A DNA stretch of 64,000 nt from Ascidiella aspersa (GCA_963924565.1 OZ004610.1:6820001-6884000), one strand, 5' to 3'; positions 21,012-51,696 are shown, counted from the first letter of the stretch. Numbers and translations are program-made. The notes: a model not told the origin generated them from the sequence alone.

Positions 21012-24000
21012 GTGAGTTCACTTGCGATTGGCGCTTTTAAGATTTTTCTAAGGGCTAACGTGCGAATCAAACCGTTTGGTTTTGTACAACTGGCGTCCCC
21101 GTGAAAGCTTACTGAAGATAGACAGGCTGTCATGTAAGCATAGACGCCGACTTTTTGTTTTTCACTAAATGTCCGCTGAAAAGATGAGTTTCTATGTGGA
21201 GTAAGATATATTTAACTTTTAGTGTTCAATCAGTTCATATCTTAATACATACGAAAAACAGTGGGAGTCGTATTTTAGAGAAAGCGCCTTAATGGTCTAA
21301 AACTTTAATCACTCTAATCAGTTACGTTTTAACGAACAGCAGTCTTTATGATATATCTGTAAACGTTTGTATTAATAAATCGAAAGTAATACTTTCTTTG
21401 CAAGGCAGGTATTTTGCGGAATTGTGTCGTGGCAATGCTAAAAGTTGTTTGAAATGCGAAAAGTTGTTTGAATAACTTTCAGAGTTTCAAATCGCACGCA
21501 ACGAATATACACAGTATTTTGCAGGAAGATTTATCATTGTTGTTTGGGGGGCGGGGGCGGGGCTGATCATCCCAAGTTTTTACGGGGTTACTCGGACCAC
21601 GCTAAGCACCCCAAACTTGGCGTTTATGTATGTAAGTAAGGCTAAGCCTAAGAGATTCGAACTCAAAGACCTTCTCGATACAAGGGCCAGTGTTCTCTTT
21701 AAGGTGCGCAACTTTGCGCGGCACCATAAGACCATTTTTACCGTAAAATTTGCACACAATTGTAGATTTAGTTATTTATCTAGATTTCGATTAGGCCTTG
21801 ACAAAGTTTACAAACCTTGAACAAAAACACAAACATATAGGCTAGCGCTAGTGAAACCAATTTTGTGCTATACCCGTAGTTTGTTGAAATGTTATACATA
21901 TTATATAGACTTTTCTAATTCGCCCCTACAATATTACAAAATAAACAAAATAATTTGAAAATAGCGATTGAGAAGTTTCTGTAAAAAGTTTAGTATAGGA
22001 TAGGTGCACGGTGTTGATGTGAAATTTTTTGTGTGTATATTGTCCTGTCAGTTTTCAGATATATCAGGCAAACTCGTTTTTTTCGTAAAATATTTAGTAA
22101 TTACAGGCCGCTCAATGGCGCCACTTTTCCTTGTGGATTTTTGTACAGTTTCCGTTAGGTGGCGACGGTTAGTCAGTTGATTCCATTGGTAGCTCAATGT
22201 GCTTAAAACTTAAAAAATATGTGCTTAAAACTTAGGCTGAATCCCCACCGGTTAGACAAAAACGCTTTAGCAGTCTGATCGCGACTAATGAGATGGAACG
22301 CAATTTATTTTGTTGTCGCGTCCCCACCGACCAGACTTGACGCAAATCTTACGCACAGCAGACAGGCACGACTAAACGCGTTTTTAGCGAGATAGCGCGT
22401 GCACTACTTTTTTACCGTGTCTGAAGATGCTTTTTTTTTTTTTTTTTTTTTTTGTGATAGAAACCATTAGTTTTTTACAGGTTTTTGTAGGTTTTATATT
22501 ATGAATGTTATTTTAAAAGGTTAAGCACGTAATTTTTTTTAATTCCAATAAAAATATATTCCTGGAACGGTCGAAAAGCCTTTTAATTCGTATCTTTCTT
22601 TTCCATGTATGATTTTACCAGCTTGACTTGTTCAAAAAACAATTTTGAAGACACCCCTGCGTAATTTTAAAACTTATCTTCATGTTTTAATAAAGTGGAA
22701 AAAAGTACATAGAAAGAAAACTCTTTATACCTTTTTTCCCAAATAGGGTGTACCCACTACTTGTGTTGTCGATAAACTGCTGGTTAAGTTTCTAAATACA
22801 TATTTCTTCCCAAATTTACATGTTATTTGCCTTCGCCATGATCACAACTGAATTATATCGCCTAGCTTTGACCAGTTCAATTTTCGCGCGCTTTGTCGGT
22901 GGGGATTGGACAGAGTCGCTTTCAGGCACGACGCGACAAGTCAACAGTCAGACATGTTTCGTCGCATCATGTCTGAGGTCCGGTGGGGATCCAGCCTTAG
23001 TGGCCACGAAGTTAAAAATATTTAGTGTAACTCTTATGCGTAGGCTTAGTGCGGTTATGTTGTGCTGCATTAGGGACAATTCTATGGTATTTGTTTTGCT
23101 AGTGCTTTGGTTTAGTTGTAGTTTACTTATGTCGCTGTTGTAGATATTGTAATAATTACATTCTCTACCGAAAACCCTCGAAATGTCTTGCACTTCATTT
23201 TCATAATACTTTGGACTGAATTAGTTTCATTATTTTACTGACTAATTAGACCTTCACACGTTTTAAACATATTTGTATAACTATTTAAACTGACAAATAG
23301 GCGTTGACTTTGTTTTTTCACAGGGGTGCTCAAAATGTGCACTAAAAGTGACATCACAAAATGTCCTCTGAAAAGATAAGTTTATGTGCGTGTTGGTGAA
23401 AAAGTTAAAATGCATTTTAAGTTATGGGATATAATTGAATGACTGTGGTAATTTATGTCAAAAAAGGTCATTAAATTGTACACATCAACAGAAACAAATA
23501 TTTTGCATAAAGATTTATCATTGTTTTACGTGGTCTAAATACCCAAGTTTCCAATAGAAGTGCTTTGGCCATCCCACGCAGGGCTTCACACGTTTTCAAC
23601 ATAGCTTTATAACCTTTTATAACAAGGAACTTGTTGTCATTCCTTATTGATCACTAATGTCTGCCAACTGCATGGTTGCAGACATGCGGTTAGCAAATAC
23701 CTTTTTGCTACGCTTTAACGATATTCGGTGTTTTTTCGGTCAGTTGCGGGCAGGGGTCGGTTTAAACAACTCGAGTCCGACTCCAGTTAAATTTACCGAC
23801 TGCTTAAAGTCTCGAGTCCGTCTCCAAGTCGGTCCTCTGTTCTATTCCAAACATATTTGTCCGTAAAATAGAGTAAAATAGTGAATATACTGTATTTTAC
23901 TTATACAAATGTGATAATCACCTATATACTCAAAATACCCTGCTGTTCTCCCTTGATACGATTTACAGTTTGTAACCTTATCGGTTTCGAACTTGGTACT

Positions 24001-25195
24001 GCGTAAGCGCACGTCGGACTCGGGACTCCGGTAGTCTTATGTACTCCTATTGTCGAGTCCCGTATTCCGCTTTATTAAAAATGGCCGACCCGGTCTAATC
24101 CTGGGTCCGACTTTGGCTTCTCAGCCTTAGTCGTAAGATCCCATTTTGGTCGTTACAAAAAATTAAAGGAAAATAAACGTATGTACCGGGTATATTGTGA
24201 CCACATTATTCTTAACGAGATACATACGGCATACGTATATAACAACTGCAATCTAGCCCTTCTAAGGCCTTTTTTTTATCAATGATAACGGTTTTCGTTT
24301 CATCATTTGGTGATCTAATAAAGACTCCCATGTTGACATTACCATTTTATCAATCGGATCAGAATCATTTGTGCTATCGTTTAATTCCTGGGAAGTTGCG
24401 ACTGATAAGAGTTATTCAAGTCCTGTGACGAAAATCAAACTCCACCGCTGTATACGCTCTGATTTTTTTTATTTTACGCACACAGTGCTCATCGCGGAAC
24501 CAAACACAGGAAAGATAGTGAGAATATAACAAGAAGTAGAACAAGTAAACGCGTGCTTCGAATACGTGGCAGCAGCTCGTATAAAAAAAAAGCGAAAAAA
24601 AGGAGTGTAGTCGAGAAAAATATATGAAACAGAAAACGAAAAACCCGGCGTACGCTCGTTCCGATTTACTTCGCGACTTGCAGCTATTTTTTACCCTTTC
24701 AAATTTTGACCATTTTTTCGTGGTAGTTCGGGCTGAAAAACAACGGGCAATTGAAAGAGCAGAAGGTAACCTGGTCACCATTGTCTAGTACAAATGTGCA
24801 GAATCCATGGATAGAAATCTGTGCAAATGTCTCTTCACTTGGCCCTATTGAACTATTTAAATAAAATGTAGATAACCAAGCGAAATTTGGCGAGAAATTG
24901 TATCGGTCGCACATAAAGCAGCTACAAATGTGGCTTGGCTTTTTAAGCGGTCATGCGTATTCGACCAGAAAAAATGTGTAGCGTTGTCTCTTCTCCTTTC
25001 TCGAGGAGGCGGCCATCAAATTTGTCCAACAGAAAGGTGCGAAAAACTATAGGCGCCGTTGATTGACTTGTCGAGGCGTAAATAAACGCAAACCTACACG
25101 TTCTCGACCGTTTCGATAAAAGTGGAGCGGTCTTTCTCCTTTTGAGGCGGCCATTGAGTTTAGCCTACAAGAAGTCGCAAAAAAACTGGGCGCCG

Positions 25196-25201
25196 TTTAT
25201 T
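25196..25201 (-). promoter_or_regulatory. Candidate polyadenylation signal AATAAA of the GPR22-like gene
   Basis: AATAAA on the minus strand about 28 nt after the stop codon. Confidence 0.4.
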
Positions 25202-25228
25202 GACTTGCAGAAGCGTAAAAGCGCAAAA

Positions 25229-26276
25229 CTACACGTTCTCGACCGTTTCGATGAAAGTCGAGCGGCTGTAGGTTCCCTGCTCCTTCAGTTGCTGGTTTTG
25301 ATTGTTTCCCAGGAGCTTCTCACTGACGTCGCGCGCAGACGAGCTGCAGCTGTCCGTGCACGTGTTGACGCGACATACAGCGTCGCCGCGCCTGCACTTG
25401 GGCGCCTGAGGCGACGCGCGACGTCCGCGGCCCCAAGGCGAGCTCCAGACCGCCGAGATGCGAACGCGGGCTCGACGCTCGAGCCGCGGCCCCGATTTGG
25501 CGCAATACACAACTCGAATGTCCTTGCGGATCTTCTCGCGCGAGAAACTGTACAGCGCCGGGTTGATAGTGCACGAAGCGACGCCCAGAACGAGACTCCA
25601 AAGGAAGGCAGCGTTCCACGCCGCGCCGCCGCTTTCAACTGGCGTTTCAAGGCGCAAACCGCGCACTGATGTATCTTTAAAGCTGCATGTTGCCGCACAG
25701 AGGCGCCGCTCGTCCGGCCCGGCCAAGTACTTGGCGACTGGAAGTGCGTGAAACGGCGTCCAGCACGTTACAAAGGTGAGCAGAATGAGGACGACCATCT
25801 TGCGCAGGTGCCGCGTCCGACGGCGCTTCTCGCGTATCTTGGCCGCAACCATTCGCTTCAGCGCAAGCACAACGGTTATGGAGAGAGCCACGGACGCAAA
25901 GTCGGTCTTGGCTTCGGCGTGATGCTCTTCCGTTCCGCCGGAATCCGGCTCCTGTTTTCCCGCGGCGCAGATTAAACCGTTTGCCGCCTTGTCGTCGACC
26001 TTTACGCCGCTGAGCTTAGGCGAAGGCGAAGGCTCGGCCTGCTTGACTTGCACAATTTGCCGCGTTTTATTGTTGTTAGCGCGCTCGATCCGCGGCGAGC
26101 TTTCCGATATCGTGGTGATGACGGTCGCGTCCTTGTCTTCTCCTCCTGCTCTTGCTCCTACTCCATCTTCTCCTCTGCTCTTCATCCATCCTCCGCAGCA
26201 CTTGAGCACGAGGCTCTTCTTCTGCTGGTCGCGCGTCATCTTGAGCGAGTGCTGCTCCCGGATCTTTTTGGCCTGT
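25229..26276 (-). CDS. GPR22: GPR22-like GPCR exon 4 (long ICL3, TM6 CWTP, TM7 NPALY, C-tail); total about 628 aa
   Basis: SITVVLALKRMV resembles GPR22 SVSVIIALRRAV; TFVTCWTP; INPALYSFSREK resembles HPLLYAFTRQK. Acceptor tttctcgcag; stop TAG at 25229-25231. Confidence 0.9.
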
Positions 26277-29200
26277 CTGCGAGAAAGCGAAAAACGATTA
26301 GGAGTTGTTGCTAATTTGCTGTTTGTTAAATTTGCTCAAGGGAAATTGGCTGATTTGTTTTTTAAAATAGAGTCCATTGACCCCTTGGGGTACGTGAACT
26401 AGTGTTAAGGGTCCATGAGGGTTTAATTAAAATATTAGTGAATTATTGATAAAGTTTAAATTAAAATGACTTGATTGAAAAAAGTTTTATCACTGAAAAT
26501 ATTTGAACTCTGCATCTTTTTCGGAACGAAAACAGCAGATTTCCCATGTCTACTTGTTTTAATAAAGTAAGTTAATGACGTCAGCTCTAAAAAATGTCAT
26601 GGCGACCCTGGTCGACGAAAAGGAAAAAAATTGTTTAGGGCCCCGCGTCAAAAAAAAGTTCAAGAGCTTAGGATTTGCGCTGATCTGATATTTAGGTTTC
26701 AAATTTGACAAGAACGGCTATTAACAAAGGTTTGTGTTAAATTACCGTTTTTTTTTAATCTGATGTTCCTGCCCCAGTGCTGATCAGTGCGCATTAAACC
26801 GGGCGCGCGAGAAAGCGAATTGATCGCAGCCTTTCGCCGCAAACGCGTCGCAAAATTTAGTTGGCCGATTTTCGTTCAACGCCAAACCGACGTTAGTGAA
26901 ACCGCGCGAATTCGCTCAATTCTTGGCGAGCTGTTCCCGTCAACCAACCACTGTCTTTTTTGGCGGTTTGTGTCGCCCCCTCAAACCGTCATCGATTTTC
27001 TGACCGGGCTTGGATTTTTTTTCGATCATTGGCGGTGTAAAAGCAAGGACGACCCCATTGAGACCTCGCAGGTCAAGTTAGCAAGTTACATGTCGGTCTG
27101 GGTAACCTCTCGTGTATACTTGAACTTTAACACAGACCTGGGTAAAATACGACCCTCGGGCCCTGTCCAGGCCACCAAACAGTTTAATCCGGCTTTTTTT
27201 TTCTAGTCAATAAAACCCTGGACTGACATAAGCTATTTCAACTCACAATATTTCTTTTGCTTTCTTGAAAAAGATCTGCACTTCATATTATGTTTATTTT
27301 GAATCCTATTTAGACAAGGCCCTCTAAGACATTTTCTTGTTCTCATGCCGACCTTTGTCAAATATTCAAAAATAATTGCTCCTGTCAAAAACATTTGCCC
27401 ATCCATGCACTACAGGGTGAAAATGGGGTAGGGGTTGCGGCCGTAAGGGGCTTAGGGCAAAAACAATTCCCGTGTCAGACATTTCGCTGGCCCGTCTGCA
27501 TGTTTACCTGCCTTAAAAACAAGGCCGCCTCCCAAGGGATATTTGCATGACCCGGTCCTGTCAATCGCGTTTCTTTTTGTGTGGCCAAGGCGGCCAAGCA
27601 AATGCCGTGACGGTATTTCACCCTTAAATTTGTCTGGTTGGAAAACAACCCTCGTGTGTAGGACAGACACGTTCATTTGTTAGCGATAAGTTTAAAAATT
27701 TGATTAAAACTGTGTTACACGTTTTTTTTAAATGATGGTTCGCCTCAGGCCGCTTTATTATCGTTTCTTCGTGAAAGTACGAATTAATGCTTTGACGTTT
27801 TGTCTGAATTTCAGCAGCTATAAAAATCTCGTAGGCTAGCTATAGATGGCATAAATTTTAGAATTTCTGAAGTACTGGAAGATTATTCGGGAAGGAAAGG
27901 GCAGACCAAAAACTCGTGGTATAGATTTTAAATATTGTACCCACTTTTCTTTCGATCAAAAAAAAAAAAAAATAAATCACAATGACAGCGAAGACAGTAG
28001 AAACCATGTTATTTCCATCATGTAACAGCCGGATATATCATCCTTTTATTTTGTTTAGGTAGGACATAGCAGCAAACACAATAACAAATTCTTATCACGA
28101 AATGTAGCCTTTAAATGTCGCCCGACGCGTTAAGAGTGCCACTAAAGGCGACGACGCTTTACGCGGTAAAAAAGCGACCTTTTAAACTTTGAAGCGCCGA
28201 GTGCGGTTGCCGTAAAAACACTTATACAGATTCGGTAATAAAGACTGAGCTAATAATAATAATATCTCTTTTAATCGCGCACGGAAATAAGTTGCTTGTA
28301 CGTTATGCGGTAAAATCACAAGCATCTAACAATAGATTCGTGCGTCGGTTCGCCTTAAACTCCCAATTTAACCCGATGCAAGCTTGCGTTTTACGCGAGC
28401 AGGAATCCTATCGCGCGCCAGAATAATCTTTCAATGGCTGCGGTGTTGCGACCGCGTTGTTTCGTAAGGCATTCTCGCACGCCGAAATGAATAATTGACG
28501 ACGCCTTCGCCGCTCGGTACCTCGTGATTGACGCTGCATTGCCAAGTGCCAAGGGCGTATACGGCCTGCACACTTGGGCTTGTTATTCGCCCAGTCAATC
28601 TTCATCCTGCAATCTGCATGTCCGTGGTTCCACCCCGACATTTTGCACTTTGGAAGTTTTTTTTAATTATACCGGAGTTGTTTTTTTTGAACTATAATTT
28701 TTAATTTTTTTATGCTTTGATTTTGAAACGATTTACAAGCCTATAGGCAATGGTTGTCTAATATTTATTTCACGTACAAAAACACTAGGTTTCTTAGACA
28801 CATGTTTTTTTAACTTTTTGGTTTCACTTATGAAAAAACACAAGTTTTTTGCTCTTTTAAAAATATAATGAAAGCCCGCATATTTTTATTAAAGCAGGAG
28901 ATTTTATGCCTAAAAGTGAAAGGTTTTCAATGTTGTACCTTTCTTACGCTGCACAGTTTTATAGATTACTTTTCTTATAACGCAAATACTACGCTTTCTA
29001 GACGGAATTCGAAAAGGAGTGAAATCAACTTTGTAGAAACATACGTCAAACAACTTTTTTTTATGTCAGTTTTCGTCTTGTGCAATACAGCTTGTGATGC
29101 GAAATTAACGTAAATATTCATTTGTGCCTCTTTAAAATAGTGTAAGAAAAATCAAATATTAAACCAGTTGACTCGAAAATGTAACTCAAAAGGCGTTTGA

Positions 29201-29994: not shown

Positions 29995-30077
29995 TTGTTG
30001 CTTCCCCGCTGCACGGACTGCAAGATCCTAAGGTACACCGAGATTATGATGATGTTGCCGATCACAAAAGTGCTGAC
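29995..30077 (-). CDS. GPR22: GPR22-like GPCR exon 3 (TM5: VSTFVIGNIIIISVYLRILQSVQRGSN)
   Basis: Acceptor ttttttcacag, donor AA|GTAAGT, 83 nt; Y..IL end-of-TM5 pattern; not in the ORF track. Confidence 0.88.
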
Positions 30078-30633
30078 CTGTGAAAAAAGTTTTAGTTTAA
30101 CTGAAAAAAAAACTTTACGTGATTTAGACGCAAACCTTACAGAACTGCGAAACCTCCGGCGAAATTATGATGTGATTTGGAAAGTTTCGAGATAACCCAG
30201 TGCCGTAAGGCTTTTTGCCTGCATTTTGCAGGTTTGTGAAGATTTGCAAAATTGTTTCAAAAAACATAATTTTCCAATAAAGGTTTGGTTGCGTTTGTTA
30301 TAGTTGACTATTTGGTAGTCTTGTAGAAAAATCCCTTTTATTGGCGTTGTCGTAAAAGTTTGACTGTCAAATATATTATATCAAAGGAGTTTGGATATAG
30401 CATTAGTTGGTTGAAGAAAAAACACTTTTTTGTTCAGCTATGACATTAGTTTGATTATGTCGCAACATTCACTCCTTGTTTTCTCGTACTTTATCAACAC
30501 CAACCGTTCACTGGGTTATTAGAACCACTGAAAAATCGCCGTTACACGATTGGCCGAAACCACGTGACGAGGGGCTTTCAAGCGTGACGCCGCCCTTTTC
30601 AAACCAAAACAAAAACAAAAAGTCGTGTCGAAC

Positions 30634-31134
30634 CTGGAAAGCGATCTGCAGCGACAAGTCGAACTTGTTGAGCGAGCACAGGTCCTTGGCGCACCTCGCC
30701 GCGCACGTGACGTTGTCCAAACCAATGACGTCACCAGAATTGATGACGTCACCCAGCCTGGATCGACTCTTGTCAGCCAGCGCCGCCACAGGCACCACCT
30801 GCCATTCCTCGCTTGCCGCTGTATCGTAGTTGAACATAAGCAAGAGAGGAGCTACTGTGGCTAGTACAGAGACACTCCACACTATGGCGATGGCGTAGGC
30901 GGTTCTGCCCTTGACGAAAAATCGCTTCAGGGCTCGCAGGCTCACGTCGGCCCGGTCCAGGGCCAGCAGCGCCGTCCCGGCCACGCTTGCAATGGCGCAG
31001 AAAATGAGCAGGCCACGATTTAGGAAGCAAAGGTTGTTGGCCTGTTGCGCCGATCCGAAGCTGAGCAGTTGCGTGACCAGGGTAATGGGCAAGGCTACGC
31101 CGCACAGGATAATATCGATCACAGCCAGGTTAAC
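30634..31134 (-). CDS. GPR22: GPR22-like GPCR exon 2 (TM2-TM4, ECL2)
   Basis: VNLAVIDIILC..LP, LDRADVSL (GPR22 has LDRYDISV), TM4 Trp; 501 nt, phase 0 to 0, AG/GT boundaries. Confidence 0.9.
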
Positions 31135-37656: not shown

Positions 37657-37911
37657 CGTGAACACGTTGCCGACGTTCTCAAGCAGGCTGCGCTTGCGAA
37701 AGTAAACCAGCACCACGATGACGTTGCACAGCAAGCCCGCGAGCGCCTCCAGTGCCAGGAACACGATAGGAACGAGCTCAGCTGGCGTCAGTCGATCGTC
37801 CTTGTTAAAATCCAGGTCTCCCTCGCTTATGTTAAGGCCGCTGCTTTGGGCGATTCCTTCGATTCTGCTGCTTGCAGTGCAGTTCACGCATCTCGCGTAG
37901 GCCGTGGGCAT
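37657..37911 (-). CDS. GPR22: GPR22-like class A GPCR, coding exon 1 (N-terminus, TM1, ICL1)
   Basis: First in-frame ATG at 37911; N-glycosylation sequons NCT and NIS. FLALEALAGLLCNVIVVLVYFRKRSLLENVGNVFT resembles GPR22 FLMLEIVLGLGSNLTVLVLYCMKSNLINSVSNIIT. Donor ACG|GTAAGT. Confidence 0.85.
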
Positions 37912-38663: not shown

Positions 38664-38665
<2 letters not shown>

Positions 38666-39440: not shown

Positions 39441-39915
39441 CAGTGGTTCTTAACCTTTTTAGCTTACGGACCGGCAAAATTTCAAAACAAGTTTTGCGGA
39501 CCGGTGGACCTTCAAAAATCAAAATCAACCCAAAATGTAATTACGACAAAAGTACATACAACTTAAAAGCAAAGAATGGAAACGTCAATTTAATAAGCAA
39601 TTTGCTTCTGTCTTTTTGATATCATACGTGTTTTACGTGGTTCATTGAAGTTTTTCACCTACAACTGGTTTTAAAGCTTAAGACTTTGAGTTGTAGTCTA
39701 CTACAACACTTGCACCATTGTGATGAACAATAAAGTCCAAAGTAGACCATTAACGCTATGTTGCGTCACAGTGCAGCAACTTACGGAACTGGCGAAGTCC
39801 TACATTTGATGGACAAGCTTTTAACATCTGGCATTTTGCAGCTAAGATGTAAAATTGTAATATATTTGGCGGACCGGCAGAAAAGTTGATGCGGACCGGC
39901 GGTTAAGAACCACTG
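39441..39915. mobile_element. hAT (Charlie/Buster-like) MITE
   Basis: TIRs CAGTGGTTCTTAACC / GGTTAAGAACCACTG; TSD GGTTAGAA/GGTTCGAA; CGGACCGG subterminal repeats. Confidence 0.9.
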
Positions 39916-39952
39916 GGTTCGAATCCTGGCTCGGACATATTAACGTCTAGTG

Positions 39953-40314
39953 CAGCGGTTCTCAACCAGTGGGCCATAAGAACATTTGAGGTGGGCCACA
40001 GACCAATTAAAAAAAGGTAGATTTATTAAAGAATTTAGTTTCATTTGTGTCACTATACCTAACTTTACAAGAATAATGGCTTTGGGAGGAATTGAGAAGG
40101 AATGTAAATGAACGTAAATTTATTGTTTAGAAGCAAGTACCTCGCTAATGCTAAATAATCTGTATTAATATATGCTCCGCTATTTTTTGTTCTAAACATT
40201 TTTTATAGTTGTTCTTTCATAAAAATTTATTGGGCCACAGAATTTTTGTGCAACGAAAATGGGAAGGAAAAAAAAGAAAAAAAAAACGAAAGGAAAAAAG
40301 GTTGAGAACCACTG
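39953..40314. mobile_element. hAT MITE family B, copy 2
   Basis: TIRs CAGCGGTTCTCAACC / GGTTGAGAACCACTG; perfect TSD GTCTAGTG. Confidence 0.92.
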
Positions 40315-42978
40315 GTCTAGTGTATGTAAATTCCCTTGCCGCCTATAGCATTGTTCGCAATTTTTGTTAGCTGTCAATCGGACAAAGGTCAACTCGTCGG
40401 CAAAAAAACTTCTCCCTATTTTCGAAATAACAAGCCTTCACACTTTTCGCAGTCGCACGCCCTTCAACGTGTTTAGCGCAGTAAATATTGCTTTCGAAGA
40501 TAAATTTCGCTCAGCACATCTTGTGGCATTTGTTCGCAATTTCGGTCCACTGTACCTTCTAGGAGGCCTTGAATTTTGCCACTCACAAAGGCCGTTTTAA
40601 AGTCTAAAACGTCCAAAGGTCTAAACCAATCGTTACCGTCCATTCATGCCTGGCGGCCCCCTTCCGCTAAACCATTTAGGTCCCCCTTTTCAGAAAAAAA
40701 ACGCGTTTTCTTAGTAAATTTGTCAGAAATAAATAGAAAGGTCTCCAACCTTTTTACGCTTAGCAATTGTGGCTCGAAACCACAGTTAGCACGGTTAAAC
40801 ATAAAAATGTATACTGGCCAACGCTTTGGCGAAGGAACAACATTTTTCGCTCTGCCGGCTGCCGATCTCTTAACGGGAAATCACCACGAAAAACTTTTAG
40901 TTCTAAGAGCGCCAGCCCGCCCGCCTTCCCTTATAGGACCCATTACAACTGCCTACACGCATTATCGATTTTCGATTGTTGGCGCCTACCCCGCACCCCC
41001 TCCCCCCTAAATCTTGCAACGGCTAGAAAGCGACATTTCTTGACGTTAAGTAGCCGCCCGCATAACCTGAGCGGTCGTAACTGGAACGACCTTCCCTCCA
41101 CTCTTGGCTCGCCTTCGCTCTAGTTTCGATCGATCTGCTTTTAAGACGAACCGACGCCGCCTCAAGAAAAGTCGCACTTATTGCTCGTTATCGATCGAGC
41201 ATCCCTGTGTCCGGACTTGCTCCTGTGCCGAAAGCATGCAAATAGTGCTGCAACCGTTTTCTCTAAAATTATCGTATGTCGATATTCGTTGCGACTATAT
41301 GAACAACGTCTTACATTTCGCCCTCTTCGTTACAGCTGGAAGAATATGATCTCTCTAGAGGGGATACGCATTTTTTTGTTTTGCGCTCATTACACAAATT
41401 CAAGGAACTTATTACCCAAATTTTCATGTTACTTAAAACAATACGCCTTATCCTGTTTTACTATTATTTTCAGCTTAAAACTATACTTTTACACGGTTAC
41501 TAGTTCGTTTGTTGTAATACGCTACTTCTTGTACTCTATATTGTTAACTATACTTACGGTACTTATTGACTGCCGCGCAAATTTCGGCCAGAGTGCCTTA
41601 CTCACAGAGTCACAGTTAATTTGAGCTCGCATCAAAAAAATGCAACATTGCGATTTCCAAATTCTACCTTCTACCGCGTATGTAACCTGCCTAACCTCCA
41701 GCGCCAGTCACCTTGCGATTTAATGGATTTTAGCTGTAAAAGCACTTGGCGTATCGAGTCCAGTGTACAAGTGGACATTCGCCCAAATCCCCAATACGGT
41801 ATACACCGTCTTGTGCCGCTTGTAAAATTCCTCGTGTCTTACCTGCGAGGTCGTTCGGTCCACTCGGAATAGCCCAGTACATATTCGAGTCTTTTCCGTC
41901 GTGTTTGCCTGTCTCAGAATCGTGCCCGCTTCGTTTTTTACGCCGCTGTTTGTCCTCCGCAAATACCACGCGCGTGTATAGTGCGCTGTTTTTTCCGCGT
42001 TGCTTTTTACCTATATGGTGGCCAATTTTTTTTACGCACATTTTTTTTTGCGGCGTTCGCATCGCTTTTTTAGGCCAGATTTTTCGGGACGAAATTTTAG
42101 CGGAAAAAAAGATCGGACCCCGCGAGGTGTAACAAGGATACTGAATACAGGATTCGTGCAGAATTGCGTCCTATATGATTTATCGGTTTAAATTCCCCGT
42201 TTCCTATTATATAAACAAAAAAACTCAAATGGTTTGAAAACCCGAGTAAAACCAAAAATGTCCGCCAAAAAAACAAAATCCTGGTTTTACCCGGGTGTTC
42301 AAACTAATAATTATTAACCCTGACGAGGTCAGCTGGTATCTGCTGCCGAAACGTCGGTTTATACTTCGTTTACACCAGAAGAGCGATTCCTATCTATTGA
42401 TATGTTGCCTGGTGGAGCTAACTCGATTTTTGAGTTTTGTTATTTATATACGCGTCAGCGGAACAGTGACCGACAAGCAAAACACTGCTGCCAATAGCTT
42501 TGGATTCCCTGAAGATACGCCATATGATATTTTAAACAAATAAACGTATGTCGTTTCCCGAGTTTGGCGCCGTTGTTTAAACGGACAAAAATGCTCGCTC
42601 GAACAATAAATATCTGATCTGGTGAACTGAGCGTGTTGAAACGTTGCTCTTTCGGGGTAAACAAGTCACTCCTTTGAAGCTTTTCAACGTGTTTGGCTTG
42701 CCTTTTGAAAGGCAAATATCGCCAACGGAAACGCGAGTATCCCATCTTGGCACGACTGCAGAAAAAAGCAATTCCCCAAATATGGAATGTCAAGCATTTA
42801 GAAAGAAATATGCACTTTCGCAAGTACGATTCGCGTTTTCTGGTTTTTGCAAGGATTCGTTTGGCAAAACTCGTTTTAACAGCAGCTTTTTTAGTTTGAA
42901 ATGCTAAACGATAAACTGTCCTGCCCTGCGCGAAACAACAAGCTGTTTTCCAAATGTGTTAGCAAATAGCTAAGTTTA

Positions 42979-43292
42979 AGTGTTTCTCAACCTTTTGACG
43001 CCGCGACCCAAATACTATACGCGCAAAAATGGCGGCCCAACTCTCTTCACTCAACTTTCTGCAAGCGAAAATAAGAAATTAGAACAGAAATAAGTTCGAA
43101 TCCGATTAATACGAGCCATATGTTCATAATGCATGTTTTCTGAAAGTATTGCCGCAAATTCTGAAGTATTGCCGCAATCTTCTCAGAACCAACCCAGTAA
43201 GTCAAACCTTGTGAACTACTTCAGTATCGGCGAGCCAAACAATTTAAAAAGCGAGCCAACTTTATTTCGCGACCCACGGGTTGGGAGACACT
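42979..43292. mobile_element. Decayed hAT MITE
   Basis: AGTGTTTCTCAACCTTTT...CGCGACCCA left end and CGCGACCCACGGGTTGGGAGACACT right end. Confidence 0.6.
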
Positions 43293-43740
43293 ACATGCTA
43301 AATGCCAACCAGCATCAGCAATATGCAGGACTCTAATCAGCATTGCTACACCGTTTTGCTTTGCCCAGTGGCCAGCAGCAGCACGTTGGGGTCGCAAAGG
43401 AAATTGATTTCACGTGGAACACTTATCGAGTTCCTTTTTATCGATCGGCCTCAAAACGACGATCAAAAGGGACAGAGCGCGCCGTTACTCCCAGTAGTAC
43501 CATGTGTACGTGCACTGCTGCTTTACTCAGTTAATCCACGATCTAGCACCTGTTTCACTTTACCTTCGTCACTTTTTTGTTGTTTAATCGTATTTTTAGG
43601 CAAAACATTGAGAAACGAGCCTTATTAGGGTTTCGTTGATAACATTTTTAAATTAGGAGCGTTTGTTAAATTTCTGATTGTCAAAAAAGCGCAATTCTAA
43701 AGAAATCAGCTCTGTCTGGTCATCCGGAAAATGTGAAGTG

Positions 43741-43771
<31 letters not shown>

Positions 43772-46700
43772 GGCCGATATGAAATTTTCTCCCATACCAA
43801 CCGACCGCGGCCAATTCCGGCACTCGAAAAGCCAAAGTGACCTATACCTTCGTATCTCAAGGATATTTCAAGGCTCATTTTGTATCTGGTTTCAGCGAAA
43901 GGCAGAAATAAAAATCGTCGCGCACGGATATTTTTCTGAAATTATAGAAGTGCGGTTGGATCTGGCCCCATAAAGCGAAAACACAAAGATTAATTTCGCT
44001 GCAGCACGAGTTTTTTATACGCAGTCACCTCAATAAGGGTTAACTTAACAAGTCACCGCATCTATTTCGTTTTTGAAATGTTTACCAACAAAGGGCTTTA
44101 TTTTAAAGTATAGGGGCATTCAATCTTTCTACAGTCAACTACTTGCGAGTTATACCAAAACCGACCCATCATTATTAAGATGAAAAAGCGTGTTGGTATA
44201 TTAGATAATATGCAGCCGCTTACATATAACAAAAAAGGCAAGGCAAACGACATTACCCGTAGTTCAACGACTTTATATTGATTTCCAAATGACACTGTTT
44301 GAACCACAGGCAAGATACACTGTTCTGAACCATGTTTCTGCCTATTTTTATTCGCTGATGTACAAAACGGATGAGGCGAAAGGGTATCGACTGCCAAGTA
44401 ACCTTATACCTTACGTACTGACTAAAAGGTTACCGCTTACCAAGAAACAAGCCCGTTTTGTCGCCGCGTCAGACTTTCATTTTCGCTATGGTACTGATAT
44501 CCAGGTGCCACTGCTGACGAACTGTATTTTAATGTAGACAAACTTTTCGAAAACCGTGCTTTTAAGGCCAAAGTAAGCCTGCTTCTAAACACTGCAAATA
44601 CGACTATCAAACAAGATTTTTGCTAAAAGAATTCCAACTACTTTTGATTTCCCTCCTTAGTTTTTCCCCGACAGCGAAAAGTGTTTGTTTAACCCTTAGT
44701 TAGGCGCACATTTTGATTATTGGTTTTCCCCTTTTTGTTACCTCTAAGGTGTTCTGTCTAGCATAGAAATCTCTGCACTGACCCACGGCATAGCGCCATG
44801 AGTAGTTTCAGGGCAGTCTGCAAACACACTCTCCACTAATGAAGCCTTAATCCCGGCTTTAATCCTCGCGCTGCACGCGAATCAATACGGGACCAGAGTT
44901 AGAATCCGCTGGCAAGGTGCTATTGTACCGTCGTCCTCATGCAAGCACCGTATGCCAAAGGTTTCTGCGATGCGTTAGCTTTGATTCGACGCGCCGCGTT
45001 TTTCTAGCCGCCGAAACGCCGGGAAAAAAGAAATCTCGAGGTCAGGCTGTTGGAAGTGATATGTCCCCCTCTCTTTCTCTCTCTTGTTAGGCAAACATTT
45101 CGAGCCGTTTTTCCATACTTTTGTGTATGTACATGGCCTGCTCCTGTTTAGGGTGTGAAAAAGGGGCGATGCTTTTTAATTGGTCATAACGATTTGCCAG
45201 GATTCTTTCATCATCGTATTTTTCTGCGGGTTCGTCATGATTGGGATTTAGTCGCATTTTTCGAGCGGGTTTACTTTGATGAAATATACTGTTGTAAAAA
45301 TAAGCCTAAATTTGGTACTATGACTGAATGACTAGCTTCTGAGTGTATAACCGTGTGAACAAATAACGTTTATTAGAAAAAAATCTTGAACTGTTTTTCG
45401 ACGGTGGCAAAATATTTAGTAATAATTTACCACAAGCAGATTTTCCAAACTTTTTGCTAAACTTGGACGCAATGGGTTTTCGTTCATCGAAGATGTTCAT
45501 TTCGCATATAAATACAACTGTTCCCAACTAGCAAAAGCATCAGATCCACATTTTCGAAGACTTTTTTGCTTGCTCGCTGTATTGGTACACGAAATTACGA
45601 CGTGCTATGTAATCTGACACCCTGTACACATGACAAAACAGTACCTACATGTACCATTCATGCTTTCACCGCATCAAACCACTGTCTGAACGTCGCAGCG
45701 TGAACTCGCAAATAAAACACACTTGGAATTACCTGCCTGGGAAATATACTTGGACTTGCAACGGCGGTTGGGAGGGAAACGACAGCTCGCTTAAAACGCT
45801 GAACCGCCAACGAACCGCGCTATCTTGTCAAACGAGAAGGGAAAAGTGGCGCATTAAAAAGTCATGAAATCCATTTTCGACGCCAGCCGATCGGTCGTCT
45901 CGTTTAGGCCGGCTTGCACACGAGCGCTTCCAATTGGTTTCTCTTTCTCTGACACTTTCGACTTGCTTGCAGCTTTGTTTAAGCTTTGCCCATGGCTCAT
46001 TTGGAATTGAGTCTGGCTTTCTATTTCCAGCACATCCCTTTGTGCACCCAAGTTCCAGGGTTTACTTATGCCAGTCTTTCTTTTTTGTTCCCAATATTAA
46101 GTATATCGGCGTAGCTTTGGCCAACCAAATTAGACAAAACATACCGCACTGGCATACATATGTTGGAATTAAATTAGTATGAGCATTTTTTTCGCATTGC
46201 TTCCGTTTTTGGAAGAATCTTGCCCAAATCCAATCTCCTTCTAACTAACTACACATACATCTAATCCAGTCGGCGACCCAACCAAATCAAACGTCGAGTT
46301 TTAGGTCGCGACATAGGTTGAGAAACACAGACCTGTTTCTTTTATTTTTTAAAAAAAGCACAGGAAAAACAAATTATAATAGAAAAACTCTCATGCAGCT
46401 AACGATCTTTTACTTTTGTATATCGCCGTATTTCCACTTTTGAAAGCCGAATTTCGCTCGCAAGTTCGCACAGAAGACAACATCGCGAAAAAGCGTAAAC
46501 TAACAACTGACTTATGGAAACGGCGTGTGTAAAAACAGGTCTAACTCCGCCAAGCAGTGCCGAAAACTCACAAAGAATTTTCGAGAATTGCAAAAACGCG
46601 ATAGAGTACAGGAGATGTACAACTTTCGTTCCTAGAGGTGCCAAAACCACAGCAGCATTATCAAAAAAGCCGGCCTTTTGAAGTAGGCCTCACCCACGTA

Positions 46701-48524
46701 TTTGCATCGCCAGCCAACCAAGTGAACCGCAAGTCACGAAATCGACTTTGACGCTCGCTCATCGGCGCTGGTTCGATGTCCTTAGCGACTCGGATTAAGC
46801 TTTAACCTACGCAATGCGCGGTTACCTGAGCCAAGAGTGACGCAATACGCTGACCGCTGTGATATAAACCTTTTTTTATGCTGAAATAACTGCTTAAAAG
46901 TAACTGGGTCGCGGGGACCACTGATCAGCCTATACGGCGCATTGCACGATTTCACAGGGTTGCCGCAATGTTTGAATCTTTAAAGGTTTTTAAATAGATT
47001 TACGTATTGAAAGGTCTTTAAAAAAAACACAAGTTTTTCCATAAGTTTTGAATGGTCTTTGAATTTATTCAATACCCAGCTTAAGTTATACATTTAAAAA
47101 GTGCCGCTGACAAAACAATTAAAAAGTGTTTTTGGTTGTGTTGACCATGGCATTTATTCTGTTTTGTTTTCGAATTATAGGTAAAAAACATCGAGAGATC
47201 CCATTTTAGCAAAATAAAAAATAAATACTCATCCCCTATCCTTCCATATCGATTGTTTTACCCTTGCCAAATGTCATTCAACCCTGGGTGAGCAATTTAC
47301 CACAGTAAGCAACCCTGCTTTAAAGAACCAGAAGCAGAGCATAAGTGTGTGAGTTGCGCAAATTAGAAGTTAAACAAAGTGCATATAATGGAGACAAAAG
47401 GGTATAATCAGTCGAAGTTGGGGTAAAATTTGATGTCAACAAACATGTCGAGCGCGTTTTCAGTGCAAAGTGTGAGCAAAAAGGCAGTCGTCGTTTCGTA
47501 TAGCTGCCGACCCAGCGTTCGGCTTTTCTGTCTCGACGCGTGTTTGTTGTTTTTCCGATTCCTTCGCGGTTTTGTTCTTCCGCGAAAATTCCTTGCTCGG
47601 ATTGTGAAACGCGCAACGTCGGCGGCGATTATTATACAAGAACGCCGAGGAGAAAAGAATATTTGGGAGACCCAGTTAAAAAAGTTAAAGAAGTGTTGCC
47701 AGCTTCATCGGTCATATTATAAATCGATAAAGTTTTTTTTTTTTTTTTTTTTTATGTTAAACGACTTTTTGCGGCATTTATCATCTGACCTTTTCGGGGT
47801 TAATAATACGAACGAGAATAAGTTGACCAACTTTTGTAGCCTGGAGATTATTAAATAGTTATGTTTCTTACACTTTTTTGTTTCGTAGCACAGTTTCACT
47901 TTACTTTCGAATGCCATTCACATATAACTTAGACCAGCCAAAATGTGTACAAAATAGTGACTGGCTAATTGTTAACGCGAATCAATTGTGAAAACCATAA
48001 AAAGTTTCACGGTACTCTTGAGACAAACTCTCGGGGTACACAATTTGAAAACCACTGCCATACAGGTAATTGATAGAGCAAGTCGGTTAATTTTTATAAA
48101 TCGCTGTTTTGGTAAGAGAATGCCCTTTGTTAAAAATGTGAAAAAAAAACTCAACAACACATAACTCTTTCAACATTGTCACTGCGTGAAAACTCCTTGT
48201 AACCTCAGTGTTATCTTTTTGCAACTTTTTTTTGGGGGGCGGACATTGTTTGCGTCTATCTGTTTCAGGCAGAAGTGACAGGTTTACTGTTATTGGATGT
48301 TTTCTTGTACAGGAAAGTTGCCCGAAATAGATGGCGAAAGCTTTGTAACCTTTCAACATTTACCAGGCCTGCTTGCGCCTGGCTCTTCTCATACTTCTTA
48401 TCCCGGAGAAATGTATAAGCCCGATGAAAAGACTGTTCAAATTAAAATATTTGATTCCTACCATTTTACTTTGTCGAGAGGTATCCGAACAAAAAGTTTG
48501 TCAATGTTGTAAACAATTCATTTT

Positions 48525-48946
48525 GACTTAAGTCCCAGTCAAGTCATTCGTTAATTAACATAAGTCAAACTCAAATCTAAATAGCGTCCCAGTCCCAAGT
48601 CGTCGGTTCCCAAGGCAAGTCACAGTCAATACATTATTAGAGCAAGTCAACTTCAAGTCAAGTCCTTGTTATAAAAATAAAACTTCAAACTATTGAAACT
48701 GGTGAACTCGTTCGTTTATTATGAGCAATGAATCAAATAAAAAAATAAGCAAGCAAATTATTTTATGTGCAAGATTTAAGGTAAATAACCAAATTTTATA
48801 AATAGTTGCTTAATTATGAGACTACATTTTAACCCAAGTCTTTTGTCCAAATGAAAGTCAAGTAATTTTAGCCAAAATACTTTAGTCAAGTCAAGTCATT
48901 TGAAAATAATGACCTAAGTGCACTTAAGTCAAGTCATTCCAACACT
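48525..48946. mobile_element. hAT-like element remnant with (AAGTC)n subterminal repeats; related copy at 56800-56944
   Basis: Dense AAGTC/GACTT pentamers and a shared right end ...CAACACTG in both copies. Confidence 0.6.
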
Positions 48947-49418
48947 GCGGTTTGTGCCTTGCTTTATGCGTTTGTGGTTCTGTGTTTGTGATTCCCACTT
49001 GAACATAAGGGTTTGAATTTGGGTAGTTACTACAGATATTCAATGATTTATATTTTAACCCGGGTAAAACGCTAATATTTTGGCTGTTGGGCAGAACGAA
49101 CGTTATTATGGCAAATAGACCAAATTGAATAAACAAATACGATCAAAAATATTTCTTATGCCAGAAAAAAATGCGTTGGATGCAAACCCTGGATTAAACG
49201 CTCCAATTAACTAGATTTTAAGCGGTATTCGATATCACCCTACGGTATGCGATGGGTACCTATCTATACACTACCACTTGGCATCGGGTATCGTTTGCTA
49301 ATCGATATTATCGGACATCGTTAGTAATCACACTAGGACCCGCAACAGTCAATAACGAATCAAAGAATAAAGTTGTTTTCAGCACCTAGGGGAATGTTTT
49401 TAAGAAGTTTATAGATCG

Positions 49419-49489
49419 AAATAAAGTCTAAATTTACAATAAAGTCAAAATTTACAATAAAGTCAAAATTTAGAATAAAGTCAAAATTT
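49419..49489. repeat. 18-bp minisatellite x4 (AATAAAGTCAAAATTTAC)
   Basis: Read directly from the sequence. Confidence 0.85.
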
Positions 49490-49870
49490 GTCGAATTATG
49501 GATTTTGACAAAGTTTTTGTGTTTCTTGAGAGTAATTTTTGTAATAATCGTCGTCGAAGCATTGTAAATCAGGAACTGCGACACAATTAAACCATATTAA
49601 CCCATAAAACCAGGAAATATGTCACAATGCCCACTTGGATCAGCACTAAATTTTATGGCAAATTGTTCATTGTTAAGCCATTGTTACGCATTTAAATAAT
49701 TATTATAAAACATTCCTTTTCATAAACGTGGTGCTGTCGAAAATCAACAGTTTGGATTTTAGGAATAGCCTACAGGCATTCTGTAATACAAAAATGCCTA
49801 AGCAAGCTAAATCTAACGCTAGAAAACACGACGCCCTTTTTATAATTCATAAACAACCTTGACTTTTCAA

Positions 49871-49947
49871 CAAAATATTACGTTTGGGTCTGAAATCGAC
49901 AAAATATTATGTTTGGGTCTGAAATCGACAAAATATTATGTTTGGGT
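49871..49947. repeat. 29-bp tandem repeat, about 2.6 copies (CAAAATATTATGTTTGGGTCTGAAATCGA)
   Basis: Read directly from the sequence. Confidence 0.85.
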
Positions 49948-51696
49948 AACTGGCATCAATTCAAGAAAGAACTGTGACCTCTACCAATAAGCAATTTCGT
50001 TAGGTCAAAATATAGTCAAAATAATGTTTTTTTTAGGTCAAAATAAAAAGCGCCCTACTGATCACTCACCCACATCCATCATTTAATAAATCCATAGAAG
50101 CATATCTCGTTCACTCCGCTTTTCTTACAAGCCTACCACACCCACAAAGGCGTTTGCTCTAAGGCAGTGTTTCTCTTCCCGTAGACCGACAACTCAAATT
50201 ATGTATCCGTTGTTTGCGTCGCCAACTGCAGTAGTTCACCTGGTTATAGATTTATTGAAATTGATTCTGAGCAAGATTTCTCCGTACTGAAGAAAATTAC
50301 ACTGGCAATGCGCGGCTCACGTTGCTTTAATTTGCATTTTTATCTATGCCAAATGTTTTACGTTTTTTTGCTCCCTAAATATTTGGTCAAGAGCATTGTT
50401 TCGCCATAGGCTCGCTGTTATACCTAAAAAAAATAGGTTGTGGCGACACTGCTTTACGGCTTTCATTTCCAGTGAAATTTGCAATCGTAGATGTTGTACT
50501 TCATTGCGGGAGAAAAGTGCACCTACTTGTTTTGGTGCATGTCGTAAAACTGCCGCCTGTCTAGTTTTAGCCCGCGCAATAGTTTCGCTTTTGTGTGTGC
50601 GAACCTAGTACGTGACCTAATCTTTAAACTCCTGTTTGTTCTGCGAAATTTTCAGCTGCTATCGCGCAAGTCGGCCTTCCCAAAGCGAATAATATAGGCA
50701 CGGTGACCTCGCAATTAAGTATACCTATTAGTTTTAGTAATTTTTACTGTTCGATTTCAAGCTAAATCTAACTGAAATTTGGTGTAAATTCTCTAAGTTA
50801 GTAATGCTCTAACTTTTTTAGTTTTTTTGACCGGTTATGCCTTGACAAAACATATAGCTGTAGTTTCCAATTGTAATATTTAGCAAAATCAACCCAAACA
50901 CCGTTTTGTATTTTTTTTTTCGGTAGGTTAATGAACACGAAATGCGTGCCAGCCTTTATAGATTGTATCAAGATTATATACAGAAATGTGTGTACGAAAC
51001 AACAACAAAACTCCCATTGACTTTGAATTGTTATATTTTTACATTTCTTCTTTGCCTTGCTGAGTCGTTAGGTTTAAAGCATTCGTTTGGTAAGTATTCC
51101 GAAACCCTCTCTTCGCTTTTACAGGATTTTTTGCAAAATTAGTATTTGAAACATGAGGGGGGGGGGGACTTGCCTTCAAAGGCTCGGTGGTAAATTGAAA
51201 ACAAGGTATTAAATACATTTCAAGGATTGAAGTGATTCGTCATTGCCCCTTGTAAGTTAGCAAACACGAATAAGGTGTATCGCCAATCCATTTTGACGAG
51301 ATTCTTTTTAAATATTGTACGACGCATTGAAAAGTTAAACGAGTTTGCGTTCTTAGACTGCATATTGAAAAAAATTGCACTACGGTACATAGAAAAATAA
51401 AAATTGACAAGGGTCATCCGAAAAAAGTCAATTAAAACCTAAACCTGAGAGCCGCATAAAACTGTTTGAAGAGCTCACCAGTTTTCCCGCGGTTTGGCTA
51501 CCCCTGCTATAGACTTTTTTTCTTATCTAATACTTATTATTACGAAAATGCAGGCAAGCCTGAAAATGGTTTGATAGGCCTTTGTTTCGAGGGCCAAATC
51601 AAAGTTCGATTTTTGAAAAAAAAAAAATTAAGAAACAAATGGCGGGCCATCCCCTTCCAAAGCTATCCCACTCGAAAATTGTCTTGCTGTTTACAG

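What the first reader, a model, noticed from the sequence alone, without database searches (positions are those of the whole stretch)
21012..51696. GPR22-like GPCR nested antisense in the orthologous COG5 intron: an ancient conserved gene-in-gene unit
Seen in sequence: COG5 exon 5 (121 nt, ...AAQSLSEL) joins exon 6 (131 nt, DYLSQG...) across a 30,685-nt intron. That intron holds a complete minus-strand 7TM receptor with GPR22-like motifs (LE...GL..N..V.V.Y; DR.D.S; S..V..AL.R.V; LY.F.R.K). Established: human GPR22 lies antisense inside a large COG5 intron. From memory it is intron 6, between 121-nt and 131-nt exons, which would be this same junction. Inference: the nesting predates the split between this invertebrate and vertebrates and has survived, which suggests a locked regulatory unit.
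Basis: partly seen in the sequence, partly recalled or inferred. Interest (0 to 1): 0.9.

Follow-up and report, generated by a model that had tools for sequence, protein, structure and literature searches.

The report
Tunicate GPR22 gene nested in COG5
A sea-squirt-type genome carries its version of the orphan receptor GPR22 backwards inside the very same intron of the Golgi gene COG5 that holds GPR22 in humans, so this gene-within-a-gene arrangement is over half a billion years old, though nothing yet shows that the two genes are regulated together.

Summary
COG5 (+ strand) has a 121-nt exon (20891-21011) and a 131-nt exon (51697-51827) separated by a 30,685-nt phase-1 intron. Inside it, on the minus strand, lies one complete class A receptor gene of four coding exons, 628 aa. 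It is the only recognisable gene in the intron.

The receptor belongs to a small family of "uncharacterized" ascidian proteins (Ciona, Styela, Clavelina). In a maximum-likelihood tree this family is sister to fish and lamprey GPR22, with support 100/99, against 44 other class A receptors.

A second tunicate-like organism (metagenome contigs) has its receptor next to the same 121-nt COG5 exon, in the same relative orientation.

Published human variant nomenclature places GPR22 c.304 at COG5 c.631+55212 on the opposite strand. Anchored on COG5 p.S186_K187, c.631 is the exact counterpart of the tunicate exon end, in the same phase.

So the nesting dates at least to the tunicate-vertebrate ancestor. 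The "locked regulatory unit" idea has no support: no conserved non-coding DNA was found, and one RNA run showed no receptor reads. Passive entrapment inside an essential host gene is the more economical explanation. This is a new member of a known kind, the conserved nested gene pair.

The parts
19153..19314 (+). COG5 coding exon 1 (ATG at 19153)
   Evidence: Pfam COG5_N hit at window 19183-19320; frame and splice model
19786..19898 (+). COG5 coding exon 2
   Evidence: Pfam COG5_N hit at window 19786-19899; splice model
20568..20637 (+). COG5 coding exon 3 (70 nt)
   Evidence: Open frame and the only GT/AG combination that keeps the conserved COG5 reading
20891..21011 (+).
   Evidence: Sequence read directly. 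92% amino-acid and 74.6% nucleotide identity to a 121-nt exon with the same splice sites in L015
21012..51696 (+). Host intron of COG5, 30,685 nt, phase 1, by far the largest COG5 intron in the window
   Evidence: No Rfam family, no long repeats and no other Pfam-recognisable ORF
25229..26276 (-). Receptor exon 4 (1048 nt including the stop): long intracellular loop 3, pre-TM6 helix, TM6 (CWTP), TM7 (NPALY), helix 8 and C-terminal tail
   Evidence: Pfam 7tm_1, 33.3 bits, E 4.5e-8; acceptor read; homologues
29995..30077 (-). Receptor exon 3 (83 nt): most of TM5
   Evidence: Splice sites and phase. Matches TM5 of the Styela and Clavelina proteins. The same peptide is continuous with exon 2 in L015
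30634..31134 (-). Receptor exon 2 (501 nt): TM2-TM4, the DRA motif, extracellular loop 2 and the start of TM5
   Evidence: Pfam 7tm_1 E 7.2e-5; splice sites; collinear with Ciona residues 83-256
37657..37911 (-). Receptor exon 1 (255 nt): start codon, N-terminus and TM1
   Evidence: collinear with Ciona residues 6-82
51697..51827 (+).
   Evidence: Pfam COG5_C positions 1-35
55628..55834 (+). Next COG5 exon (approximate bounds, from the Pfam COG5_C match)
   Evidence: 37.8 bits
62190..62291 (+). Further COG5 exon (approximate bounds)
   Evidence: weak COG5_C match, collinear in the profile

Best explanation
The window comes from a tunicate-type genome. This is inferred from the receptor's nearest relatives, all of which are ascidian proteins. 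It carries the single-copy orthologue of the vertebrate orphan receptor GPR22: a 628-aa class A GPCR with four coding exons. The gene is nested antisense in the phase-1 intron of COG5 between the 121-nt and 131-nt exons.

Human GPR22 lies, also antisense, in the COG5 intron at the homologous nucleotide, after c.631. The gene-in-gene arrangement was therefore present in the common ancestor of tunicates and vertebrates and has been inherited since.

The most likely reason it has lasted is structural and is inferred, not shown. A gene sitting inside an intron of an essential, single-copy housekeeping gene can only be separated from it by a break that would destroy the host, or by precise relocation. 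The pair is therefore carried along passively while each gene is kept by its own purifying selection.

By homology, the receptor is expected to work as a rhodopsin-type G-protein-coupled receptor with a very long third intracellular loop. Its ligand and coupling are unknown.
For: Anatomy and phases.

Single copy in the 308.6-Mb genome.

Family:
- A profile of exon 4 searched against 1.84 billion representatives gave 13 proteins at E <= 2.4e-28. It then dropped to E ~1e-8, where the first full-length hits are fish proteins that NCBI names GPR22. Lamprey and characid 'GPR22-like' proteins follow.
- Careful ML tree: window E2 and E4 with Ciona, Styela and Clavelina, 99/95; GPR22 clade, 100/98; the two together, 100/99, against 44 other class A receptors (the quick trees agree).
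- All four exons are collinear with the tunicate proteins (three of four in Ciona, no E3 hit) and with cyprinid GPR22.
- Shared pre-TM6 helix, intracellular loop 2 and helix 8 motifs are absent from SSTR and opioid receptors.
- In the ESM Atlas, the only real structural match of the Ciona member is the GPR22 cluster.

Second species: in L015 the receptor is on the + strand and the 121-nt COG5 exon is 6.5 kb past its 3' end on the - strand, with identical splice sites.

Vertebrates:
- Dog GPR22 lies in a COG5 intron.
- A human variant is described as COG5 NM_006348.3:c.631+55212G>A and as GPR22 c.304C>T.
- Human p.S186_K187 corresponds to c.556-561. The distance from that K codon to the exon end is 70 nt in human, and 70 nt from the homologous TK in the window.
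Against: - The similarity between tunicate and vertebrate proteins is low: 20-28% identity, with E ~1e-8 on the TM6-7 profile, a range shared with unrelated GPCR fragments. Both clades sit on long branches.
- The outgroups were drawn from the profile's own hits, not from a complete class A set.
- Vertebrate GPR22 has HPxxY and DRY. The window has NPALY and DRA.
- In L015 only one flank of the nesting is seen. The 131-nt exon lies beyond the fetched 20 kb.
- Equating human S186-K187 with the window's T131-K132 rests on conservation of the exon and on my recollection of the human sequence. Published residues M32, C64 and V111 agree with that recollection.
- Passive entrapment is an argument, not a measurement.
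- No transcript evidence was obtained for the receptor.
Confidence: 0.75

Rival explanations
1. Regulatory lock. The pair is kept together because the COG5 intron carries the receptor's cis-regulatory landscape, with COG5 as a bystander gene in a regulatory block, or because antisense transcription couples the expression of the two genes.
For: - The arrangement has been retained in tunicates, whose gene order is otherwise heavily rearranged (established knowledge).
- The host intron is 30.7 kb, against 0.25-6.4 kb for its neighbours. It has 13.8 kb of unassigned DNA upstream of the receptor's ATG.
- Conserved microsynteny through cis-regulatory constraint is documented for other pairs (PMC3514665).
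Against: - blastn between the window's intron and 20 kb of the second species' locus found only the COG5 exon and no non-coding block.
- The receptor gave 1 read in the sampled 6% of an RNA run of the same species, which shows no coupling with a housekeeping host.
- GPR22 is not a developmental transcription factor, the usual target type in such blocks.
Confidence: 0.15
2. The tunicate family is not the GPR22 orthologue. It is a fast-evolving class A receptor drawn to GPR22 by long-branch attraction or convergent loop motifs, and its presence in COG5 is a separate event.
For: - Identity to GPR22 is low, and profile E-values overlap those of unrelated GPCR fragments.
- Branches are long and amino-acid composition is deviant.
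- The TM7 and DRY motifs differ.
Against: - Support is 100/99 under a site-heterogeneous model.
- All exons are collinear with GPR22.
- The shared pre-TM6 helix sits in the same register to CWxP.
- Independent genomic evidence: same host gene, same intron position, same orientation. COG5 covers only about 1e-4 of either genome, so a chance coincidence is very unlikely.
Confidence: 0.06
3. Convergent nesting. True GPR22 orthologues entered the COG5 intron independently in tunicates and in vertebrates, for example by retroposition in vertebrates, where the coding sequence is intronless (from memory).
For: The vertebrate GPR22 coding region is recalled as a single exon, while the tunicate genes have three or four coding exons. 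That difference would fit a retrogene origin.
Against: It needs two independent landings in the same intron and the same orientation of one gene out of many thousands. Intron loss in place, or intron gain in tunicates, explains the structural difference. One such change is visible between the two tunicate loci, where the E2/E3 intron is present in the window and absent in L015.
Confidence: 0.03

Closest known systems
Vertebrate GPR22 (orphan class A receptor; human NM_005295, zebrafish gpr22)
   Same: - Sister clade in the tree.
- Collinear over all seven helices.
- Shared intracellular loop 2 motif LDR.D[IV]S[LV], a basic amphipathic helix before TM6 (A[LI][KR]R...), CW.P in TM6, and helix 8 Y.F[ST]R[EQ]K.
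- Long third intracellular loop.
- Located antisense in the same COG5 intron.
   Different: - 628 aa against about 400-700 aa in the vertebrate proteins seen here.
- DRA rather than DRY, and canonical NPALY rather than HPLLY.
- Four coding exons, whereas the vertebrate coding sequence is recalled as intronless (memory, not tested).
- Only 20-28% identity.
- Ligand, G-protein coupling and any role in cilia (zebrafish, PMC4204907) are untested.
Ascidian 'uncharacterized' proteins: Ciona intestinalis LOC100184969 (XP_002127820), Styela clava LOC120328692, Clavelina lepadiformis LOC143448943
   Same: - Same family: exon-4 profile E 1e-46 to 1e-50.
- 35-48% identity.
- Same architecture, including a conserved C-terminal SA[VI]WS..WG motif.
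   Different: They come from other species, none of them named as GPR22 by its source.
Other anciently conserved nested gene pairs: TIMP inside synapsin (flies to mammals, from memory) and LRRTM inside alpha-catenin (PMC3933685, listed)
   Same: A small gene sits antisense in a large intron of a conserved host gene and has been kept over hundreds of millions of years.
   Different: The host and guest genes are different. No paper in the searched library links COG5 and GPR22 by microsynteny or nesting beyond mammals.

Membership tests
Class A (rhodopsin-type) GPCR, Pfam PF00001 | Match to the 7tm_1 profile and seven hydrophobic helices with CWxP and NPxxY | tested here: met
   Exon 4 scores 33.3 bits, above the 30.5 cut-off. 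Exon 2 scores 22.8 bits, E 7.2e-5, below the cut-off on its own. The seven helices, CWTP and NPALY were read.
GPR22 orthologue group | Falls with named GPR22 sequences, to the exclusion of other class A receptors, in a phylogeny | tested here: met
   The joint clade has support 100/99 and branch length 1.74, in a tree of 54 rows and 355 columns under LG+C20. Names come from NCBI records. Limit: the outgroups are the 44 nearest profile hits, not a full repertoire.
GPR22 orthologue group | Best hits outside its own lineage are GPR22 | tested here: inconclusive
   The first full-length non-tunicate hits are GPR22 (E ~1e-8). However, short fragments of other GPCRs score alike. The word-based searches found tunicate proteins only. 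No search from GPR22 back to tunicates was run.
GPR22 orthologue group | Signature segments: intracellular loop 2 LDR.D[IV]S, basic helix before TM6, helix 8 Y.F[ST]R[EQ]K | tested here: met
   Anchored comparison. SSTR2, opioid-like and GnRHR-like hits lack the pre-TM6 segment.
GPR22 orthologue group | Vertebrate-type HPxxY in TM7 and DRY in TM3 | tested here: not met
   The window has NPALY and DRA; Ciona has DRG. These read as lineage-specific states rather than family-defining ones. They are nevertheless real differences.
GPR22 orthologue group | Genomic position: antisense inside the COG5 intron that follows human c.631 | tested here: met
   The human position comes from HGVS in PMC6690583. 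The numbering anchor is p.S186_K187. The window's exon ends at c.466, with the same 70-nt distance and the same phase 1.
GPR22 orthologue group | Gi/o coupling and a role in cilia, as reported for vertebrates | not testable with these tools
   This needs cell assays or knock-down in an ascidian.
COG5 (conserved oligomeric Golgi complex subunit 5) | COG5_N and COG5_C profile matches, collinear along one strand | tested here: met
   COG5_C matches exon by exon, best 37.8 bits. COG5_N has two collinear weak hits. There is only one such locus in the genome.
Conserved nested gene pair | Same guest gene in the homologous intron of the same host gene in distant lineages | tested here: met
   Seen in the window, in a second tunicate-like locus (one flank only), in human and in dog (intron number not given).
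Genomic regulatory block / co-regulated unit | Conserved non-coding elements or coupled expression | tested here: not met
   No non-coding blastn match between the window's intron and L015, and no receptor reads in one RNA run. Both tests are weak: the species are distant, and only one sample was read, at 6%.

The most novel reading that the evidence does not exclude
The COG5 intron and the GPR22 gene form a functional unit that selection has kept intact since before tunicates and vertebrates split. Either the intron is the receptor's conserved regulatory landscape, or antisense transcription through the receptor tunes it against the ubiquitously transcribed host. The arrangement may be older still, if GPR22-like genes in non-chordates, such as the mollusc clusters flagged, sit in COG5 too.
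Probability: 0.12. Interest if true: 0.65.

Novelty: new member of a known kind. Interest (0 to 1): 0.45.

Why it matters
It gives a name and an evolutionary anchor to a set of ascidian proteins that their sources list as uncharacterized. It also extends the orphan receptor GPR22 beyond vertebrates into Ciona, an animal that is easy to manipulate. That could help find the receptor's ligand and test its proposed role in cilia.

It adds a clean, nucleotide-exact example of a nested gene pair that survived in tunicates, whose genomes are known for scrambled gene order. That makes it a useful test case for separating passive entrapment from regulatory constraint.

It does not by itself reveal a new mechanism.

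Tried and rejected
- Word-indexed protein searches, with exon 4 and with the Ciona protein, returned only tunicate gene models and no names beyond 'uncharacterized'.
The annotated Ciona, Styela, Clavelina, fish and lamprey loci could therefore not be inspected.
- The PDB holds no GPR22 and no COG5 chain matching these exons. Its nearest GPCRs are opioid, somatostatin, 5-HT5A and alpha-1 receptors at weak E-values.
- P0108, the long-branch sister of the GPR22+tunicate clade, has none of the GPR22 motifs and was set aside.
- A possible TM5 exon at 27861-28037 was rejected in favour of 29995-30077, which has proper splice sites, the right phase and homology.
- Within the intron there was no other Pfam-recognisable ORF, no Rfam family and no long repeat.
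- RNA evidence: one read on 5,981 bases, from 6% of one run. That gives no verdict on expression or splicing.
- Literature: no paper links COG5 and GPR22 by microsynteny or nesting. The supplement of Irimia et al. 2012 is not held, and its main text does not mention the pair.
- The joined 628-aa receptor was never sent to a search. Each exon was searched by reference and kept as its own row in trees. One search joined candidate COG5 exons only inside a script, to check the reading frame.
- The earlier scan notes on this window concern the upstream gene and did not bear on this finding.
Full report
**What is in the sequence**

It runs 20891-21011 (121 nt), ends ...AAQSLSEL plus one extra base, and is followed by GTGAGT. 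The next exon follows an AG at 51695-51696, runs 51697-51827 (131 nt), begins (D)YLSQG, and is followed by GT. The intron between them, 21012-51696, is 30,685 nt and phase 1.

The downstream exon matches Pfam COG5_C from profile position 1. Six-frame searches of the whole 308.6-Mb assembly found a single collinear series of COG5_N and COG5_C exon matches around it.

A frame and splice-site model gives these coding exons: 19153-19314, 19786-19898, 20568-20637 and 20891-21011. The 121-nt exon is therefore the fourth coding exon and ends at c.466 of this species' coding sequence.

The host intron is far larger than its neighbours, which are about 0.25 to 6.4 kb.

**The nested gene**

On the minus strand there are four coding exons with canonical splice sites and compatible phases.

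| Exon | Window coordinates | Length | Content |
|---|---|---|---|
| E1 | 37911->37657 | 255 nt | ATG, N-terminus, TM1 |
| E2 | 31134->30634 | 501 nt | TM2-TM4, extracellular loop 2, first turn of TM5 |
| E3 | 30077->29995 | 83 nt | rest of TM5 |
| E4 | 26276->25229 | 1048 nt, with the stop | about 150-residue third intracellular loop, TM6 with CWTP, TM7 with NPALY, helix 8, tail |

Pfam 7tm_1 matches E2 and E4.

The small exon E3 is supported in two ways. It matches TM5 of the Styela and Clavelina proteins. In a second species the same peptide is continuous with exon 2, with no intron there.

The window has no N. The intron holds no other Pfam-recognisable ORF, no Rfam family and no long repeat. 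The receptor is single-copy in the genome.

**What the receptor is**

A word-indexed search with E4 found only four unnamed partial gene models. I aligned them with E4 and ran the profile against 1.84 billion cluster representatives.

- Thirteen proteins scored E <= 2.4e-28.
- Scores then dropped to about 1e-8.
- The full-length members of the top group are Ciona intestinalis XP_002127820, Styela clava XP_039251157 and Clavelina lepadiformis XP_076805025. All are labelled 'uncharacterized'.
- The first full-length proteins after the gap are fish proteins that NCBI names G-protein coupled receptor 22. Lamprey and characid 'GPR22-like' proteins follow.
- Short fragments of other GPCRs score in the same range. 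The profile ranking alone is therefore not decisive.

The tree is more decisive. With 54 rows and 355 columns under a site-heterogeneous model, it gave:

- the two window exons, kept as separate rows, plus the three ascidian proteins: one clade, 99/95;
- the five GPR22 sequences, including lamprey: one clade, 100/98;
- the two clades together: 100/99, on a branch of 1.74 changes per site, against 44 somatostatin-, opioid-, GnRH-receptor-like and other class A proteins (quick versions).

Further agreement:

- All four window exons align collinearly with the cyprinid GPR22.
- The clades share the loop-2 motif LDR.D[IV]S[LV], a basic amphipathic helix just before TM6 in nearly the same register to CW.P, and the helix-8 motif Y.F[ST]R[EQ]K. 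The other receptors lack the pre-TM6 segment.
- In the ESM Atlas, the only real structural match of the Ciona protein is the GPR22 cluster, which also ranks third by sequence features.

Differences: DRA or DRG instead of DRY, NPxxY instead of the vertebrate HPxxY, and three or four coding exons.

The topology, tunicates sister to vertebrates including lamprey, is what orthology predicts.

**Is the nesting shared?**

*Within tunicates.* A scan of JGI metagenome contigs with the family alignment returned four loci of one organism. In L015:

- the receptor lies on the + strand: E1 at 5457-5606, E2 fused with E3 at 7638-8222, and the last exon at 9641-10663;
- 6.5 kb beyond its 3' end, on the minus strand, lies a 121-nt exon (17286->17166);
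- that exon has the same acceptor and donor positions as the window's COG5 exon and is 92% identical in protein and 74.6% in DNA.

This is the same relative position and orientation as in the window. The 131-nt exon is not within the 5.4 kb available upstream of the receptor, so only one flank is seen.

*In vertebrates.* A dog study states that GPR22 lies within an intron of COG5 (PMC9635648).

For human, a variant table in PMC6690583 describes chr7:107112470 C>T (hg19) both as GPR22 NM_005295.2:c.304C>T and as COG5 NM_006348.3:c.631+55212G>A. Three things follow:

- GPR22 sits in the intron that follows COG5 c.631.
- The intron is phase 1, since 631 = 3 x 210 + 1.
- The two genes are on opposite strands, because the base changes are complementary.

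To relate c.631 to the window I used the published COG5-CDG allele c.556_560delAGTAAinsCT, p.S186_K187delinsL (PMC3697985).

- In the conserved 121-nt exon, the homologous dipeptide is T131-K132 in the window and S-K in L015. Its K codon ends 70 nt before the exon end.
- In human, K187 ends at c.561, and 561 + 70 = 631.
- The offset of 55 codons is constant along the N-terminal exons.

Equating the two dipeptides rests on the exon's conservation and on my memory of the human sequence. Published residues M32, C64 and V111 agree with that memory.

I take this as showing that the human host intron is the positional and phase homologue of the window's intron. The human exon lengths, and the label 'intron 6', could not be checked.

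**How it most likely works**

*Shown:* one receptor gene lies in the homologous intron of the same host, in the same orientation, in two tunicate-type genomes and in human.

*Inferred:* the arrangement existed in the tunicate-vertebrate ancestor. COG5 spans roughly 1e-4 of either genome, so two independent landings in the same intron and orientation are very unlikely.

*Why it persisted is not shown.* The economical reading is entrapment. Any inversion or translocation that separated the guest would cut an essential single-copy host gene, so the pair travels together while each gene is maintained for its own function.

- blastn between the window's intron and the second locus found only the COG5 exon.
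- An RNA run of the same species gave one read over 5,981 bases covering three receptor exons, with about 6% of the run sampled.

Both tests are weak. They do not exclude a regulatory link.

The difference in intron content between tunicates (three or four coding exons) and vertebrates is best explained by intron loss or gain in place. One such change separates the two tunicate loci.

**Novelty and limits**

Anciently conserved nested pairs are a known phenomenon. Searches of the paper library found nothing that links COG5 and GPR22 by nesting or microsynteny beyond mammals. The ascidian proteins carry no GPR22 name in their sources. This is therefore a new member of a known kind.

Limits:

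- Outgroup sampling in the tree is limited to the profile's own hits.
- There is no transcript support for the window's gene model.
- Only one flank is seen in the second species.
- The joined spliced receptor was not used in any search. Every exon was searched by reference, on its own.

Noticed in passing
window 29995-30634 compared with L015:7617-8222: The intron between receptor exons 2 and 3 (inside TM5) is present in the window's species. It is absent in the metagenome organism, where TM5 is read through in one exon. This is a lineage-specific intron gain or loss.
   Followed up: partly
window 25229-25500 (-), receptor C-terminal tail: A short tail motif, SA[VI]WS..WG[RK], is shared by the window, Ciona and Clavelina proteins, far downstream of helix 8. 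It is not seen in the fish GPR22 sequences. Its function is unknown.
   Followed up: no
window 25228-25919: Contigs of a DNA run of the same species (X1) differ from the window at six single bases inside receptor exon 4 and carry one extra base just outside the stop codon. This is probably allelic variation. The coding effect was not worked out.
   Followed up: no
window 37912-51696: About 13.8 kb between the receptor's start codon and the next COG5 exon holds no recognisable gene, RNA family or long repeat. It could hold the receptor's promoter, 5' UTR exons or enhancers.
   Followed up: partly
window 25142-25751, both strands: Several long ORFs overlap receptor exon 4 in other frames and on the opposite strand. 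They are a by-product of the exon's high G+C content (about 0.49, against 0.35-0.43 around it), not separate genes.
   Followed up: no
G000:C4:18687128-18687370 (L006): The best COG5_N profile hit in the genome (E 0.015, below the cut-off) lies 11.8 Mb away from the COG5 locus, on the minus strand. It is probably a chance coiled-coil match.
   Followed up: no
L015:17287-20420: In the second organism, the COG5 exons upstream of the 121-nt exon are not within 3.1 kb. In the window they lie only 0.25-1.1 kb apart. The 5' introns of COG5 therefore differ greatly in size between the two species.
   Followed up: no
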